From: Gracilinanus agilis
Lineage: Eukaryota
DNA length: 63,867 nt
Assembly: GCF_016433145.1 (NCBI RefSeq)
Contig: NC_058132.1
Coordinates: 64,002,948-64,066,814 of the forward strand
Reading direction: 5' to 3'
Under the pieces are notes generated by a model, which saw only the letters and a program-made list of their open reading frames with translations, had not been told where the DNA came from and ran no database searches. Below, one piece after another: positions 6,955 to 12,300 of this stretch. Position numbers and translations under genes: made by a program. The first letter of the stretch is position 1, and each line of letters starts with the position of its first letter.

Positions 6955-7150
6955 GTACTTGTTCAATCGTGTCTGACTCTTTCATGACCTCATATGAGGT
7001 TTTCTTGGCAGAGATACTAGAGGTTTGCCATTTCCTTCTCCAGCTCTTTTGACAGATGAGGAAACTGAGGCAAACTGTGTTAAGTGACTTGCCCAGGGTC
7101 ATACATCTAGGAAGTGTCTGAAGCCAGATCTGATTTCAAGGAAGTGGAGT
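6955..7150 (-). mobile_element. MAR1-type marsupial SINE (similar copies near 4505, 5460, 12295, 12985, 18380, 26270, 32785, 40265, 42400, 53640)
   Basis: TTCTTGGCAGAGATACTAGAGGTTTGCCATTTCCTTCTCCAGCTC...GAGGAAACTGAGGC: CORE domain plus RTE-like tail. Confidence 0.75.
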
Positions 7151-7459
7151 TTTGCTCACCCACCTGTGCCTGGCACACAGTAGGGCTTGCTTCATGAAAG
7201 CTGGACTGATCGAAGGTGGGGACTGTTTTCTTAGTTTGGCTTAGTATCCTCAGAGCCAAACTCCGTGCTAGGAGCTCCCTAAATGCAAGCTTGTTACTAG
7301 GTCGGCTGATGATCGGCTCGTCTAGAGGTGCAGGAAGAGGCAACACTTTGGGGCTGGGGGTGCAGTCCACTAGAAATAGCCCCAAGTGGCTTGAAGAGGG
7401 ATCTCGGGGCCAGAAGGTGAAACAGCGATTTTGAGCCATCAGTCAGTTCACAGAGGAGC

Positions 7460-7830
7460 TTCCCGGCAGAGCCCCGCGCCTCTGTGGTGCCCAGTTTGTC
7501 CCCCAGGGGGCGCTCACCCGGATTGCGCCCGTCAGGACCCTCCCCGTGACGTCATGGAAGCGGCCCCGGAAGTCGAGCGGAAGTCGAGCTCACGTGGGCG
7601 CCGGCGCCCCGAGCTCCCATGGCCCGCTCTCGGCGCACCGGCGCGCACCGCGCGCACTCCTTGGCCCGCCAGCTGAAGGCTAAGCGGCGGCGACCGGACC
7701 TGGATGAAATTCACAGGGATTTGAAGCCCCACAGTGCCGCCCGCCGGCCCCAGCCCGACGCAGAGCCTGACCCCGACTTGCCCGGTGGCGGCCACCATCG
7801 TTGCTTGGCCTGCGCGTAAGCTCCGGGATC
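7460..7830 (+). promoter_or_regulatory. ZNF593 CpG-island promoter: CRE, two ETS sites and an E-box
   Basis: CpG-dense. TGACGTCA at 7547-7554; CCGGAAGT at 7566-7573 and GCGGAAGT at 7577-7584 (inside a direct repeat of CGGAAGTCGAG); CACGTG at 7591-7596, 23 nt before the ATG. Confidence 0.75.
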
Positions 7831-9035
7831 GGGAGGGAACATCCGGGGGCGGGTCATCTGGGGACTGGCCCGGGGAATCTGGGGGAGGTGTCGAAGCTCG
7901 TGGGGCGGAGGAATGAGGGACGTAGGAAGGAGAGGCTCTTGGAGAGGGCTAGGAGTAGGGACTCTGGGGACGGAGGCCTATGGCGGGGGCAGGGGGAGTG
8001 AGGTCCTGGGGAGGAGAGGCTCATTGGGAAGTGGGGACTTAGGGATGGAGGCTCATAGGAGCCGGGAAGTGGGGTTCTGGGGGATACAGGTTCATAGGAG
8101 CCGGGAAGTAGGGACCTTGGGATGGAGGTTTTTGGGGGCCTGGGAAGTGGGAACTAGGGTGGAGGCCTGTGGGAGGTGGGGCAAGGGCATTGGAGACCCA
8201 GGAGTGTGGATGTTGGAGGCGGGGGTTGAAAGTGGAGCCTAGGGAGTGAAGGCTTATGAAGGGATGGGGAATTGGGGACCTGAGGACTAAGAGGTTTAAG
8301 ATTTTGTGGGGATGGTATTTGAGGATCTGGAGGATGGAAGCTTTTGGAGATAGAACTAGGGAATTGGGAACCTCTGGAGGCTAGAAACCTGGGAATGGAG
8401 ACTTTGGGAGTTTGGGACCTGAGGGATGAAGGCTGGGAACAATCCTAAATCAGGAAGGAGAGGAAGCTGGGAGTTGAAAGATCCCATTATGAGGCCAGTG
8501 ACTTATCTGGATTCCTCATTTCTTAGCTCTTCTCCTTTGGTAGGGGGGGAGGGAAGAGAAGGAAAGGACCCTCCACCCATATCTCACCTTTATCCCCTTC
8601 CAGGAGATACTTCATTGATACTGCCAGCTTGAAGAATCATTTGAAGTCCAAAGATCATAAAAAAAGGTGGGATACTTATGGAAGCCCCCATTTTATCTTC
8701 CCTCCTTCTGACCCTTCCTCTCTTCTCTCTTTTACCACTTTTCCTCTTTGCCCTTCCCCACAGCATTTTTTCTTTCTAGCCTTTAATCTCTTCCCTTAGG
8801 TTTTCTCTTTGATCTGCCCCTTCTCTGTTTCTTCCCAACCTTGCCCCTACTTTTTTTAACCTTATTTTAACCCTTGTCTCTTTTCTCCTGTAGGCTGAAA
8901 CAGCTGAGAGTAGAACCCTACAGTCAGGAAGAAGCAGAGCGGGCAGCAGGCATGGGCTCTTATGTGCCCCCCAAGAGGTTGGCAGTGCCTACGGATGTAT
9001 CCACTGAGACATCTGATATGGAGGTGGCCAGCTAA
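7619..9035 (+). CDS. ZNF593: Zinc finger protein 593 (Bud20-like C2H2 protein, pre-60S maturation), 133 aa
   Basis: Exons 7619-7815, 8604-8666, 8894-9035 total 402 nt with GT-AG introns. [32 protein letters not shown]...CLACARYFID...[33 protein letters not shown] matches ZNF593; C-x2-C...H-x5-H finger intact. Confidence 0.97.
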
Positions 9036-9143
9036 TGCTGCCCAAAGGCAGAGGAAACCATTCTTGGATAGCGAAGCCAGGCTGAGCTGGCTGGACTGTG
9101 TCTTTCCCTCATCTTTCAGAACAGAAACTAATTCCTCTTTCCC

Positions 9144-9149
9144 ATTAAA
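9144..9149 (+). terminator. Candidate ZNF593 poly(A) signal (ATTAAA)
   Basis: First AWTAAA hexamer I found after the stop at 9035; motif only. Confidence 0.45.
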
Positions 9150-9427
9150 GGAAATGAGCTGCTCTCTCTCTTATCGTGTTTCTGATTTCCCCTAAATGCC
9201 AGGCTGGCGCTAATGCCTATTCTGCACCCATATTCCCTCAGGAGCTCCTATATCCCCTAGTGCTCCCGACTTCTGTGTTTGCCCCTGGGCTATGCCTATG
9301 GCACTCTGCTTCCTGCTGAACCTTTGGTCAACTCCCTTCTTTTCCCTTTCCTTGCTTTGGACCTGAGTTACCAGAAGGAGCCCCAAGCATGGCAAGTCTT
9401 CTATATTTGCTCCTTGCAATTTCCAGG

Positions 9428-9433
9428 TTTATT
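9428..9433 (-). terminator. Candidate ZNF593OS poly(A) signal (AATAAA)
   Basis: TTTATT on the + strand about 200 nt beyond the ZNF593OS stop; motif only. Confidence 0.5.
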
Positions 9434-9631
9434 CCATCCAAGGCTCCCATTTCTTCAGCTTAGGCAGGCATAGGTGCTCCCTGTACCCCGCCCTCTTCCC
9501 CATGGCCTCCCAGCCTGCTGGGGCCACCATCTGGTGGGACAAGGGTAGGAGGAATGGTTCTTCTGGATAATTGGGTCAGATGGATGCTGGGGCCCCCTGC
9601 TCTCCCATACTTCCAGGGGTTCCATCTCCTA

Positions 9632-10203
9632 TCATGGTGTCTTTGGGGACTTTCCTTGATCCATCAGCTGTCGGACACTGTAGAAGGAGAGCCCTAGGCC
9701 ACACACAGCCAGCAATGTGGCCAAGGCACCCATCAGTTGGTTCCGGGGCTCTGCCTCCAGCTCCCCAGCCACTTGCATCTGGGTAATGGGGCAGAAAGAG
9801 AGCAGTGTTGGGAGGGCTGAGGCAGCCAAGGAGTCTGTTGAAATCCCAGGGTATTCTCTCTGGCCTAATGGAACCAGACCTGGGAGATTGGGAGGGGTAC
9901 CCAGGAGAAGGAGCGGGACTGGGTGGGAGATGAGAGTAACTCCCAACCCCCCTTCCTCCTTAGGGTCAGGAAGGGCAAGAGGATGACTTCCCTCCCAGGG
10001 ACATTCCATCCCGATGCTCTCTCGCATCAGTGCTGCAGAGCTGGGATATGGGGCCCAGCTGCTCAGGCGGCATGCAACGTGCCTGGCTGCCTCCTGGGGT
10101 GGTGGGGTGTGGGTAAAGGAGAAGGAAATGGGGGAGGTTAGGGGGTGAAGGGAGTTACCTCTAGTCTCCGAAAGTAGCCGGGGGTCAATCTTCCAAAGCG
10201 CAT
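9632..10203 (-). CDS. ZNF593OS: ZNF593OS-type transmembrane microprotein, 63 aa
   Basis: Exon 10203-10159 (MRFGRLTPGYFRRLE, donor GAG|GTAACT) plus exon 9778-9632 (acceptor cccag|ATG; MQVAGELEAEPRNQLMGALATLLAVCGLGLSFYSVRQLMDQGKSPKTP, TGA). Same length as, and similar to, the recalled human protein (MRFRRLTPGYFR...AGELKAEPR...). Confidence 0.88.
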
Positions 10204-10959
10204 GATTGGCCTACGGCTGGGGGGCACATATGGGTGTCCTTGTCTTTCTGGTGGTGGTCTGGTAAGGGCAGGAAGGGAATGAATTTGGCATTCCCAATGC
10301 CAGCGAACAGAAATTGGGTCAGGGGGAGGGGGCAAGAACGCTGAGGGTTACATCTTAACTGTGTCCCCACTTTTGCTTACCGTCCTTCAGACGCACATAC
10401 GCACACGCAGTCTCCGACTTTCTTCGTTACTGGGTGCTCAGCTCTGTTCCAGTCCCGAATTGTCCTTTCTACCCCTCATCCCCATGCCAAGAATGCTCCT
10501 TTCATCTCCCCCCAACCCAATGGTATGGACGCCTGGAGAGGATGCTCACCTGCGGCTGCCCACGACTCGCAGTCAGCCGGGGTGGCAGCGGGCCCTTTAA
10601 ATCAGGTCCCCTCCCCTTGCTGGGCCAGTCTGGGCGGCAGCTGTCAAGAGATATCAGCATCAGGCTGGAATCAGGCCTTTGTGCCCACCCCACTTCCTGC
10701 CATGGAGGCAGGCACCTAGATTCAAGGAGAGAGAAGGCCATGCTCCAGCAGTTTATGCTTCATCCAGGGTAGAGGTGAAAGAAGACCCCTGTTTCTGCCT
10801 GGCTTGGGGTCCCAGACCCTATTTGGATATGCGGTGAGACTTCAGGCTCCCTGGAGGCAGCCAGCAGTGGCACAGAGTAAGGAAGCTAGGGATTTGAAGC
10901 CTCTTTTTGACACTATCTGTGCCCCTTTATTTCTCTTTCTCCTCTACTCTCTAAGGTCC

Positions 10960-12300
10960 TCTATAATCGGGGCCTTTGCTTTCCCCTCCTCCCAGTCTTC
11001 TAAACCCTCTGCAGTCTGGCTTCTGAGCTCACCGTCATTCAACTGAACCTGCTTGCTCCAGTTACCAGTAATCTCCTAACTGCCAAATGGAATGGCCTTT
11101 TCTCAGCCCCCCCCATCCATCTTAACCTCCCTGTTGCTTCTGACACTGTCAATCGTCTCCTTCTGGATACTCAAGCTTCTAGGTTTTCGTGACACTGTTC
11201 TCTCCTGGTTCTCATCTGTGCCCAATCACTCTTCAGTCTCATTTGCTGGTTCCTCATTCACATTGTCCTCCAGCTTTGGGTGTCCCCCAAGGCGCTGTCC
11301 TAAGTCCTCTTTTCACTCCATACTCCGACTTGGTCACCTCATTAACTTCCATGGGTGATCATTTTTTAGGAAGGTGCTTTCCACATCAATAGACACATCT
11401 CTAGTCTCTCTGATGATCTAGTCACCAATTCTCTCTTGAGTATCTCACTGGATGTCCCAGAAGCATTGTTAACTCAACATGTCTAAAATGACTCCTTATC
11501 TTTTCCCATAAACCTTTCCCCACCCTTCTAGATCTCCCTATCAAGATATATATAATAAATATATTTAAAAACTCTTATCTTCTGTCTTAGTGTCAATTCT
11601 AAAACAAGAGTATAAGTGACTTGCCTAGGGTCACAAAACTAGGAAGTATCTACCCCTGTTAATATTGTGAGCACCAACATCCTCCAATGCTAGAAATCTC
11701 AGTGTTATTCTTGACTTGTCACACTCTACATTCCAATCAGTTGCCAAATCTTGTTTCTACCTTCTCAGCATCTCCTGACTACCTCCCCTCCTCTCCACTA
11801 TTAGAGCCACAACGGTAGCCTGAGTCTAGGCCCTCAGCCCCTCTCCACTCCAGCAGTTGTCTTCCTGCCTCCAGAGTTTCCCAATCCAATCCAATCCATT
11901 CTCTCCTCATCTCCCAACATTTTTCTAAAGCAAAGGTCTGACCATGTTACAAACCTGCCCCGAAATAAACTCTAGTTGGCTCTGTAATTTCCAGGATCAA
12001 ATATAATGCTCCATAACCTGGTCCATTCCTCTTTCCAGCTTACACTTTACTCTTCCCTCCACCCCGATGACAAACCAGATCTGTTCAGAGTTCAGAGTTT
12101 ACTCAACTCCTACCCCTGGGCCATTGCATTGGCTGACCTCCACACTGAAGTGTTCTGCCCTTCACCTCGGATCGGTTCTTTGGCTTCCTTCAAGACTCAG
12201 CCCAAATCTCGCTTTAGTCTTTAAGAGTCCTTTCCTGGATCCTCGCTGCTAATGCCTTATCCTTTCAGATTACCTCCCGTCTGTTCCATCTGTGGGCAGC
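10960..12300 (+). mobile_element. L2 fragment, decayed
   Basis: Pyrimidine-rich L2 ORF2 and 3' sequence (TGCCAAATGGAATGGCCTTTTCTC...CTCAACATGTCTAAAA...TCTGACCATGTTAC). Confidence 0.7.

What the first reader, a model, noticed from the sequence alone, without database searches (positions are those of the whole stretch)
9632..10203. 63-aa single-pass membrane microprotein (ZNF593OS) conserved to marsupials and split across two spurious-looking ORFs
Seen: a phase-0 splice joins MRFGRLTPGYFRRLE to MQVAGELEAEPRNQ-LMGALATLLAVCGLGLSFYSV-RQLMDQGKSPKTP. This gives a basic N-terminus with no acidic residue in the first 14, one 21-residue hydrophobic helix and a short basic tail. Recalled: the human protein has the same length and shares RLTPGYFR and AGELxAEPR. 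Inference: a gene named as an antisense transcript is an old, constrained microprotein gene, with a layout typical of regulators of membrane complexes. The N-terminus could be a mitochondrial-type targeting signal. This is the best candidate here for uncharacterised biology.
Basis: partly seen in the sequence, partly recalled or inferred. Interest (0 to 1): 0.72.

Follow-up and report, generated by a model that had tools for sequence, protein, structure and literature searches.

The report
Ancient membrane microprotein gene ZNF593OS
The two short reading frames are the two coding exons of a real, spliced gene for a 63-residue single-pass membrane protein (ZNF593OS). It is already annotated, is conserved under purifying selection from lampreys to mammals, and has no known protein function, and the only published work treats the mouse and human gene as a non-coding heart RNA.

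Summary
On the minus strand, 10203-10159 and 9778-9632 join in phase 0 across a GT-AG intron and encode 63 residues. The product equals database protein P0001, "putative transmembrane protein ZNF593OS" (Monodelphis domestica and Gracilinanus agilis).

- **Splicing.** Spliced contigs identical to the window cross 10159>9778 in two public runs.
- **Constraint.** The reading frame has dN/dS of 0.15-0.3. The two other frames give 0.7-5.8. The coding exons have no indels, while the intron and UTRs do.
- **Gene structure.** The intron sits at the same codon in every species examined, from turtle and frog to sturgeon and teleost. It is also there in a second paralogue.
- **Depth.** A profile search found 113 relatives. 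All the named ones are vertebrates, including coelacanth, sharks and lampreys. The gene is therefore far older than "conserved to marsupials".
- **Conserved features.** The invariant parts are an N-terminal PGY-R-L(Q) motif and a small-residue face on the membrane helix (A35, G42, S46).
- **Known families.** There is no Pfam, NCBIfam or PDB match.

Function and location are untested. My best guess is a partner-binding subunit of a membrane complex, mitochondrial inner membrane rather than ER/SR. Papers on the "lncRNA ZNF593-AS" delete or overexpress what is probably this gene without addressing the ORF.

The gene is already known. The family depth, the constraint and the paralogue are useful additions.

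The parts
10550..10642 (-). 5' non-coding exon used in the spliced contigs of the window's own species. The contig runs on upstream with letters that do not lie in 9100-11100, so the true 5' end is not fixed.
   Evidence: joint 10258|10550 (skips 291, GT-AG on the minus strand) in X23 and X24. X24 record 23 covers 10550-10642.
10381..10479 (-). Alternative 5' non-coding exon with approximate ends, seen in the Monodelphis-type spliced contig L001.
   Evidence: L001 1-89 aligns to window 10479-10390. GTAAGC follows 10381; the same exon is present in L012. X23 record 20 covers 10397-10553 unspliced.
10159..10258 (-). Exon carrying the start codon. The CDS part is 10203-10159 (15 codons, MRFGRLTPGYFRRLE). 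Kozak context is CCAATCATGC.
   Evidence: (exon ends set by two joints).
10168..10191 (-). Codons for RLTPGYFR (residues 5-12), the most conserved motif of the family. P8 and Y10 are invariant and G9 and R12 nearly so across 33 vertebrate sequences of both paralogues and lampreys.
10185..10229 (-). Out-of-frame upstream ORF (MCPPAVGQSCALED*) that overlaps the main ATG. Its ATG has a weak context. It is present in the didelphid copies, and no equivalent upstream ATG was seen in the three Australidelphian loci.
9779..10158 (-). Phase-0 intron of 380 nt, GT..AG. It lies at the same codon in the marsupials, eutherians, turtle, frog, sturgeon and teleost examined, and in paralogue B of a sea turtle.
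9410..9778 (-). Last exon. The CDS is 9778-9635 (48 codons) plus the stop at 9634-9632, followed by about 220 nt of 3' UTR.
   Evidence: X24 record 23 ends at 9410; X23 record 18 reaches 9367.
9674..9736 (-). Codons for the hydrophobic helix, residues about 30-50 (LMGALATLLAVCGLGLSFYSV). The conserved small-residue face is A35, A39, G42, S46, S49.
   Evidence: mean Kyte-Doolittle 1.87; AF2 helix 26-57, pLDDT 86-89.
9428..9433 (-). AATAAA polyadenylation signal of the microprotein gene.
   Evidence: A contig ends about 20 nt downstream at 9410.
7619..9165 (+). Convergent neighbour ZNF593 (133 aa, zf-C2H2_jaz). Its CDS runs from 7619 to the stop at 9035, its pA signal is at 9144, and contigs end at 9165. 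A CpG island lies at its 5' end (7501-8000). No overlap with the microprotein transcript was seen here; the gap is about 200-245 nt.

Best explanation
This is the marsupial orthologue of ZNF593OS, a three-exon gene with two coding exons, transcribed convergently with ZNF593.

**Shown.** The 63-codon frame has evolved under purifying selection, and the gene is at least as old as the vertebrates.

**Inferred layout.**
- A basic N-terminal segment carries the near-invariant motif R-L-T-P-G-Y-F-R-x-L-Q and folds as an amphipathic helix (about 8-23).
- A short hinge follows.
- One moderately hydrophobic membrane helix spans about 26-57, with its core at 30-50.
- A 13-15-residue Pro-rich tail begins with a conserved R/W-K/Q pair.

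**Inferred insertion.** The whole protein is hardly longer than the ribosomal exit tunnel and the helix lies near the C-terminus. Insertion must therefore be post-translational, either tail-anchor-like or by mitochondrial import.

**Inferred mechanism.** The conserved residues in the helix (A35, L38/A39, G42, S46, S49) fall on one face, with a spacing of 3-4 residues. This is the signature of tight helix-helix packing. I therefore propose that the protein works as a small accessory or regulatory subunit. It would dock its membrane helix against a partner membrane protein and present the invariant N-terminal motif at the membrane surface.

**Location, my commitment without a test.**
- Mitochondrial inner membrane, about 45%. 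This rests on the presequence-like N-terminus followed by a marginally hydrophobic stop-transfer-type helix.
- ER/SR membrane, about 30%.
- Elsewhere, about 25%.

The published heart phenotypes of 'lncRNA ZNF593-AS' knockout and overexpression may be wholly or partly due to this protein.
For: **Gene model.** The identical annotated protein is P0001. Spliced contigs at 100% identity carry joints 9778|10159 and 10258|10550 in two runs. A Monodelphis-type intronless contig has the same junction.

**Codon-level constraint.** This was computed exon by exon and summed.
- Window vs Dromiciops: dN/dS 0.15, p = 1e-3.
- Wallaby vs koala: 0.23, p = 6e-3.
- Peromyscus vs Tamandua: 0.17, p = 2e-5.
- Frog vs turtle: 0.09, p = 1e-6.
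- Frames +1 and +2: 0.7-5.8.
- Against Monodelphis, all 7 differences are synonymous.
- The CDS is 84-98% identical among marsupials with 0 gap columns. The intron is 69-79% identical and the 3' UTR 62-84%, both with many gaps.

**Age.** There are 64 word-search hits and 113 profile hits. Named members come from monotreme, eutherians, birds, turtle, snake, frogs, coelacanth, sturgeon, teleosts, sharks and lampreys.

**Structure and synteny.** The phase-0 intron is at the same codon throughout, including in paralogue B. The convergent arrangement with ZNF593 holds in marsupials, eutherians, turtle and frog.

**Architecture.** Hydropathy and charge are. The AF2 model shows helix 8-23 and helix 26-57, with pLDDT 86-89 in the membrane helix.

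**Literature.** ZNF593-AS is described as a conserved, cytoplasmic, cardiomyocyte-enriched lncRNA. It has three exons, lies on the strand opposite Zfp593, and was knocked out by deleting exons 1-3 (PMC10199406; PMC9381960).
Against: - There is no direct evidence of translation. No Ribo-seq or mass spectrometry data were available, and no paper in the library links the locus to a peptide.
- The runs with spliced contigs are not on record as RNA. I infer that they are RNA from their small size and the exon-only coverage.
- Localisation, topology and partner are untested.
- The hydrophobic stretch is marginal. Mean Kyte-Doolittle is 1.5-2.3, and the summed apparent free energy is about 0 to +3.8 kcal/mol without position terms.
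- The AF2 model of the N-terminal half is of low confidence (pLDDT 58-68).
- There is no similarity to any solved chain or curated family from which a function could be borrowed.
- The identity of the published 'ZNF593-AS' with this gene rests on its description (opposite strand of Zfp593, three exons), not on a sequence comparison.
Confidence: 0.85

Rival explanations
1. The transcript is a genuine long non-coding RNA (ZNF593-AS), and the 63-codon frame is a chance or untranslated ORF. On this view its conservation reflects RNA-level function or the neighbouring ZNF593 3' end.
For: Published work assigns RNA-level mechanisms. These are scaffolding of HNRNPC on RYR2 mRNA and binding of IRF3 (PMC9381960; PMC10199406; PMC10090314). 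No translation data were available here.
Against: - Substitutions are depleted for amino-acid changes in the predicted frame only.
- The coding exons have no indels, while the intron and UTRs have many.
- Length, start, stop and intron phase are kept from the fishes examined to mammals, and the protein is recognisable in lampreys.
- The CDS does not overlap the ZNF593 CDS or, in this species, its transcript.
- In teleost and sturgeon the gene is kept without a ZNF593 gene called within 6 kb.
- There is no Rfam match.
Confidence: 0.03
2. The gene is bifunctional. The mRNA encodes the conserved microprotein and, at least in eutherian heart, the same RNA also acts as the published regulatory RNA.
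For: RNA pull-down and RIP data are reported for ZNF593-AS. Strong protein-level constraint was shown here. The two are not mutually exclusive.
Against: - The non-coding parts of the transcript are poorly conserved even among marsupials: the 5' region is 48-71% and the 3' UTR 62-84% identical, with many gaps.
- The 5' exons differ between two didelphids.
- A deeply conserved RNA function is therefore unlikely. The knockout and overexpression designs described do not separate RNA from peptide.
Confidence: 0.25
3. The protein is a tail-anchored ER/SR membrane peptide that regulates a calcium-handling protein, working like phospholamban, sarcolipin, myoregulin or DWORF, rather than a mitochondrial protein.
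For: - It has a helix-hinge-membrane-helix layout.
- The helix lies near the C-terminus and there is no signal peptide.
- The RNA is reported as cardiomyocyte-enriched, and manipulating it alters Ca2+ handling and contractility.
- From established knowledge, several regulins were first annotated as lncRNAs.
Against: - No sequence relation to any regulin or other Pfam family was detected.
- The C-terminal tail is 13-15 residues, longer than in the regulins, and the helix is rich in Gly, Ala and Ser and only marginally hydrophobic.
- The N-terminal 14-20 residues are basic and free of acidic residues, as in mitochondrial presequences.
Confidence: 0.3

Closest known systems
Annotated ZNF593OS / Zfp593os proteins ('putative transmembrane protein ZNF593OS', e.g. 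XP_044527293.1, UniProt A0A5F8HIM4_MONDO)
   Same: The window's product is identical to the annotated Monodelphis and Gracilinanus protein. It is 89-92% identical to other marsupials, 68% to platypus, about 57-63% to eutherians and 51-57% to frogs, turtle and sturgeon. Length, intron position and the neighbourhood with ZNF593 are the same.
   Different: Nothing differs at the level of gene identity. Marsupials have E15 where almost all other vertebrates have Q15, and an acidic stretch (E21, E23, E25) before the helix.
'lncRNA ZNF593-AS' of the cardiology literature (Fan et al., Circ Res 2021; PMC10199406)
   Same: It has three exons, lies on the strand opposite ZNF593/Zfp593, is conserved between human and mouse, and is cytoplasmic. 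It is most probably the same gene.
   Different: It is described and analysed as non-coding. The text that I could read does not mention coding potential. Identity was not verified by sequence, and the 2021 paper is not held.
Regulins: phospholamban, sarcolipin, myoregulin, DWORF, endoregulin and another-regulin (single-pass SERCA-binding micropeptides)
   Same: They work like the proposal here. They are small, have no signal peptide, and have a cytosolic amphipathic helix, a hinge and one membrane helix that packs against a large membrane protein. They are muscle- or heart-enriched, and several were first filed as lncRNAs (established knowledge).
   Different: There is no detectable sequence relation. 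This protein has a longer C-terminal tail, a less hydrophobic helix and a different conserved motif set (PGY-R-L-Q and A/G/S face).
Mitochondrial single-pass microproteins (mitoregulin/MTLN, BRAWNIN/UQCC6, SMIM4/UQCC5 and similar)
   Same: They are under 80 residues, have one membrane helix, are conserved across vertebrates, are often encoded by transcripts once called non-coding, and are abundant in heart (established knowledge). The basic N-terminus here is free of acidic residues.
   Different: No sequence relation was found to any curated family or solved respiratory-complex chain. Mitochondrial location was not tested.
Paralogue B of the same family ('zgc:193593' in salmonids; unnamed proteins in shark, characins, fugu and the sea turtle Caretta)
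   Same: It has the same motif set (R-L/I-T/S-P-G-Y-I/F-R-x-L-Q, A...G...S.YS.RQ), the same size, and the same phase-0 intron after ..LLQ.
   Different: It has a different locus, next to ERICH1 in Caretta. It carries the diagnostic GYSSRQL(T/A)LHH tail. It was not seen in mammals among the 113 hits.

Membership tests
ZNF593OS orthologue group | 63-65-residue product with the N-terminal RLTPGYFR motif and one hydrophobic helix | tested here: met
   The product is identical to P0001 and scores E = 3e-40 against the marsupial profile.
ZNF593OS orthologue group | Two coding exons split by a phase-0 intron after codon 15 (or 17 in non-mammals) | tested here: met
   One search shows it in nine loci and in a teleost. 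One search shows the joint in spliced contigs.
ZNF593OS orthologue group | Tail-to-tail (convergent) position next to ZNF593 | tested here: met
   Window. The same holds in wallaby, Dromiciops, koala, frog, turtle, Peromyscus and Tamandua. No ZNF593 gene was called within 6 kb in sturgeon or teleost.
Protein-coding gene (as opposed to lncRNA) | Purifying selection on the reading frame (dN/dS < 1, frame-specific) | tested here: met
   0.09-0.37 in frame and 0.7-5.8 in the other frames; 7 of 7 differences are synonymous.
Protein-coding gene (as opposed to lncRNA) | Evidence of translation (ribosome footprints, peptides) | not testable with these tools
   No Ribo-seq or proteomics tool was available, and no paper reports it.
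Tail-anchored / post-translationally inserted single-pass proteins | Single hydrophobic helix ending within about 30 residues of the C-terminus, with no N-terminal signal peptide | tested here: met
   the helix is at about 30-50 of 63 and the tail is 13-15 residues. The N-terminus is basic and not hydrophobic. The insertion route itself is not testable here.
Mitochondrial presequence-bearing proteins | N-terminal basic segment free of acidic residues and able to form an amphipathic helix, with a processing site | tested here: inconclusive
   charge is +3 or +4, there is no acidic residue in the first 14 residues in all 11 species tested, and the maximum hydrophobic moment is 0.58-0.72. However, the segment is near-invariant with a central Pro-Gly. 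No predictor such as TargetP or MitoFates was available, and no cleavage motif was assessed.
Regulins (phospholamban / sarcolipin families) | Sequence membership in the curated families | tested here: not met
   Pfam scans returned no such family at E values up to 10. The profile search against PDB chains returned nothing.
Regulins (phospholamban / sarcolipin families) | Binding to and regulation of SERCA | not testable with these tools
   This needs co-immunoprecipitation or activity assays.

The most novel reading that the evidence does not exclude
ZNF593OS is the founding member of an unnamed, vertebrate-wide family of membrane microproteins. The family has two ancient paralogues, and the second is lost or still unannotated in mammals. 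The peptide, not the RNA, would produce the cardioprotective and calcium-handling or inflammatory phenotypes published for 'lncRNA ZNF593-AS'. It would do so by docking through its A/G/S helix face and invariant PGY motif onto a mitochondrial or SR membrane complex.
Probability: 0.3. Interest if true: 0.7.

Novelty: already known. Interest (0 to 1): 0.42.

Why it matters
The gene model is not new. It is annotated in this species group and across vertebrates, so the window adds no new gene.

What matters is the contrast between two bodies of knowledge.
- Annotation pipelines call it a putative transmembrane protein.
- All functional literature in the library treats the mouse and human locus as a non-coding RNA and builds therapeutic arguments on that.

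The frame has frame-specific purifying selection. The protein is recognisable in sharks and lampreys, and its intron position is fixed across the jawed vertebrates examined. It also belongs to a two-paralogue family with a handful of invariant residues.

This makes a sharp and cheap experiment possible. An ATG-mutant or frameshift rescue can be compared with an ORF-only rescue in the existing knockout and transgenic mice. The invariant residues to mutate are P8, G9, Y10, R12, L14, A35, G42, S46 and Y48. If the peptide is the active species, this would add one more deeply conserved membrane microprotein to heart physiology.

Tried and rejected
**Searches that found nothing**
- Pfam on exon 2, on both mechanical ORFs and on five full-length orthologues gave only sub-threshold chance hits: DUF6587 at 15.8 bits against a cut-off of 27, DUF1358, CD1107-like and zf-HC2.
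- NCBIfam found nothing.
- The profile of 27 orthologues against all PDB chains gave 0 hits at E values up to 10.
- Foldseek of the AF2 model against PDB gave 0 hits at E values up to 10. I did not run the wider structural search, because a 63-residue two-helix model cannot give a meaningful match.
- Rfam on 7000-12000 found nothing.

**Literature**
- ZNF593OS appears once, in a biomarker list.
- Of the terms Zfp593os, 'ZNF593 opposite strand', A0A0U1RRA0 and ZNF593-AS searched together, no listed paper holds any of the first three, and every listed hit comes from ZNF593-AS.
- The motif RLTPGYFR gave none and zgc 193593 gave none.
- ZNF593 together with micropeptide or microprotein returned only lncRNA reviews and an unrelated pipeline paper.
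- Fan et al. 2021 is not held.

**Other**
- Earlier notes of the scan had nothing on this place.
- Exon 1 alone (15 residues) is below the 20-residue minimum of the family scans and was not searched on its own.
- I considered and rejected the idea that conservation is a by-product of antisense overlap with ZNF593. The CDSs do not overlap, the transcripts are about 200 nt apart here, and the fishes keep the gene away from znf593.
- I considered the in-frame N-terminal extensions annotated in many eutherians (82-122 residues). I treat them as model variants, because marsupials, monotreme and all other classes start at the conserved Met.

Full report
**What is in the sequence**

On the minus strand an ATG at 10203 opens 15 codons (MRFGRLTPGYFRRLE). 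They end at 10159 and are followed directly by GTAACT. After CCCATTACCCAG, the stretch 9778-9632 reads MQVAGELEAEPRNQLMGALATLLAVCGLGLSFYSVRQLMDQGKSPKTP and then a stop.

ZNF593 lies on the plus strand. Its first coding exon starts at 7619 and its stop is at 9035, and its 5' end carries the only CpG island of the window. The two genes are therefore convergent.

**How I handled the spliced model**

- Exon 2 was searched by reference.
- Exon 1 is too short (15 residues) for the family scans and was not searched alone.
- The exon 2 search returned a stored 63-residue protein, P0001. Its sequence is exactly the two exon translations in order. All later work on the full length used that stored protein and other stored proteins.
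- The dN/dS counts were made exon by exon and summed, without concatenation.
- No human contig was fetched, and no human protein was singled out. Eutherian comparisons used non-human species.

**Identity and source**

P0001 is annotated by NCBI as "putative transmembrane protein ZNF593OS" in Monodelphis domestica and Gracilinanus agilis, and by UniProt as "ZNF593 opposite strand".

Window positions 8132-11703 are 100% identical to GCA_016433145.1 CM028237.1. They are 88.9% identical to GCA_027887165.1. From memory of the accession numbers, the first is the Gracilinanus agilis assembly and the second the Monodelphis domestica assembly. That assignment is recalled, not tested. Either way the window is a didelphid opossum, and this gene model already exists in its annotation.

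**Transcript evidence**

Two small public runs of the window's own organism, X23 and X24 (52-60 million letters, one study), hold contigs at 100% identity.
- They skip 9779-10158 and 10259-10549, both with GT..AG on the minus strand.
- One 632-nt contig covers 10642-10550, 10258-10159 and 9778-9410.
- A deep run of the same study (X22) holds the unspliced genomic form only.

The runs are not on record as RNA. Their size and exon-only coverage make RNA the only sensible reading, but this is an inference.

Separately, a 443-nt intronless contig in another genome assembly (L001) is 99-100% identical to the three exons of the Monodelphis-type locus. It uses the same coding junction but a different 5' exon, which corresponds to window positions about 10479-10381.

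The AATAAA at 9433-9428 precedes the contig end at 9410. The ZNF593 signal is at 9144 and its contigs end at 9165. In this species the two transcripts were not seen to overlap.

**Constraint**

I used loci fetched for wallaby, Dromiciops, koala, Peromyscus, Tamandua, a turtle, a frog and a sturgeon. Nei-Gojobori counts in the annotated frame are below.

| Pair | Nonsynonymous / synonymous differences | dN/dS | p |
|---|---|---|---|
| Window vs Dromiciops | 5.5 / 11.5 | 0.15 | 1e-3 |
| Wallaby vs koala | 7 / 10 | 0.23 | 6e-3 |
| Peromyscus vs Tamandua | 14 / 22 | 0.17 | 2e-5 |
| Frog vs turtle | 29.7 / 35.3 | 0.09 | 1e-6 |

- The same alignments read in the other two frames give 0.7-5.8.
- Against the Monodelphis-type copy, all seven coding differences are synonymous. 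L001 carries the same CDS as that copy, so it is not an independent comparison.
- Among marsupials the coding exons are 84-98% identical with no gap column.
- The intron is 69-79% identical, the 3' UTR 62-84% and the 120 nt upstream 48-71%, all with many gaps.

**Depth and family**

A profile of ten marsupial proteins found 64 proteins. These include platypus (68% identity), many eutherian orders, frogs, a sea turtle, a cobra, a sturgeon and a teleost. The eutherians cover rodents, bats, carnivores, cetartiodactyls, primates, xenarthrans, afrotherians, eulipotyphlans and pangolin.

Pfam and the word search left the protein's function open, so I ran the exhaustive profile search. It gave 113 hits. 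Look-ups name coelacanth, birds, eel, stickleback, smelt, pipefish, sharks and two lampreys. All the hits that carry a name come from vertebrates.

Many longer hits are exon 2 embedded in a mechanical ORF or in an N-terminally extended model. Broad retention across mammalian orders argues against frequent ORF loss, although I could not screen genomes systematically.

The phase-0 intron lies after the codon for ..L-Q/E in every locus examined, including teleost and sturgeon. ZNF593 is the convergent neighbour in marsupials, eutherians, turtle and frog. No such gene was called within 6 kb in sturgeon or in the teleost examined.

**A second paralogue**

Shark, several teleosts (named zgc:193593 in salmonids) and the sea turtle Caretta carry a divergent second member. 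Its motif reads MFFRLPRLTPGYIRYLQTQ ... GYSSRQLTLHH. Chiloscyllium has both types, and turtles as a group have both.

In Caretta the second gene lies next to ERICH1 and has the same phase-0 intron after ..LLQ. No mammalian member of this type appeared.

Across both paralogues and lampreys, the following columns are invariant or nearly so: P8, G9, Y10, R12, L14, Q15, Q17, A35, L38, G42, S46, Y48, S49 and R51.

**Protein features**

- The first 14 residues carry +3 or +4 and no acidic residue in all eleven species tested.
- The best 19-residue hydrophobic window is 30-48, with mean Kyte-Doolittle 1.5-2.3. The summed apparent insertion energy is about -0.4 to +3.8 kcal/mol, computed without position terms. 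The helix is therefore only moderately hydrophobic.
- The tail is 13-15 residues in most species and up to 23 in the cobra.
- AlphaFold2 with the 26-sequence alignment gives helix 8-23 (pLDDT about 60-68) and helix 26-57 (pLDDT 86-89), with mean pLDDT 70.
- The conserved helix residues recur every 3-4 positions and so lie on one face. They are small (Ala, Gly, Ser).

**How it most likely works**

Shown: the gene is spliced, constrained and ancient, and encodes a protein with one hydrophobic helix.

Inferred:
- Insertion is post-translational, because the protein is hardly longer than the ribosomal tunnel and the helix is near the C-terminus.
- The small-residue face packs against another membrane helix.
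- The invariant PGY-containing amphipathic segment is a surface-bound interaction motif.

My choice of the mitochondrial inner membrane (about 45%) over ER/SR (about 30%) rests on two features: the presequence-like N-terminus and the marginal hydrophobicity of the helix. No predictor or experiment supports it yet. The extreme conservation of the N-terminus argues that, if it targets, it is also part of the mature, functional protein.

**Relation to the literature**

Only one paper in the library uses the name ZNF593OS, in passing. Under the name ZNF593-AS the locus is a much-cited "conserved, cardiomyocyte-enriched, cytoplasmic lncRNA".
- It lies opposite Zfp593 and has three exons, which were deleted in the knockout. 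It was overexpressed as a full-length transcript.
- The reported mechanisms are stabilisation of RYR2 mRNA through HNRNPC and sequestration of IRF3.
- The text I could read does not discuss coding potential.
- No paper pairs the locus with micropeptide or microprotein work.

That this is the same gene is an inference from the description. If it holds, none of the described manipulations separates RNA from peptide.

**Verdict**

The gene is already annotated, so it is not a discovery of the scan. Its value is as a well-supported lead: a microprotein conserved across the whole vertebrate tree, with invariant residues and an unnoticed paralogue, which the functional literature treats as non-coding.

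Minor extras are listed under 'noticed in passing'.

Noticed in passing
L001 (443-nt contig JARCCX010987630.1 of genome assembly GCA_029782595.1): An intronless, three-exon copy of the microprotein transcript sits as a separate contig in a genome assembly. It is 99-100% identical to the exons of the Monodelphis-type locus L012. It is either cDNA-like contamination or a very young retrocopy.
   Followed up: partly
L013:45800-47450 (Caretta caretta, next to ERICH1); also proteins P0136, P0139, P0150, P0170: The family has a second, ancient paralogue (motif RL/ITPGYIRxLQ ... GYSSRQL). It has the same phase-0 intron and is present in sharks, teleosts (zgc:193593) and a sea turtle. It was not seen in mammals among the 113 profile hits. 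Lampreys have two divergent members (P0134, P0135).
   Followed up: partly
window 10185-10229 (-): An out-of-frame 14-codon upstream ORF overlaps the main start codon. It is present in the two didelphid copies, and no equivalent upstream ATG was seen in wallaby, koala or Dromiciops. It may dampen translation by leaky scanning.
   Followed up: partly
window 10381-10479 and 10550-10642 (-): Two different non-coding 5' exons are spliced to the same acceptor at 10258. One is seen in this species' contigs and the other in the Monodelphis-type contig. The X24 contig continues upstream with 70 letters that do not lie within 9100-11100, so a further upstream exon or a different start is possible.
   Followed up: no
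window 10976-11042: A short stretch has very high summed contig depth (385 in X22, 157 in X1) and many loose ends on both sides. It behaves like a dispersed repeat fragment just upstream of the gene.
   Followed up: no
window 7501-8000: This is the only CpG-island-like stretch of the 64-kb window (GC 0.71, CpG observed/expected 0.85). It lies at the ZNF593 5' end. The microprotein gene has no such island at its 5' exons, which would fit tissue-restricted expression.
   Followed up: no
eutherian proteins P0018, P0022, P0026, P0029, P0035, P0037, P0042: Many eutherian gene models carry in-frame N-terminal extensions (82-122 residues, ending ..P/S-T-M-R-F-R-R-L-T-P) ahead of the conserved Met. 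I did not test whether these longer isoforms are real.
   Followed up: no
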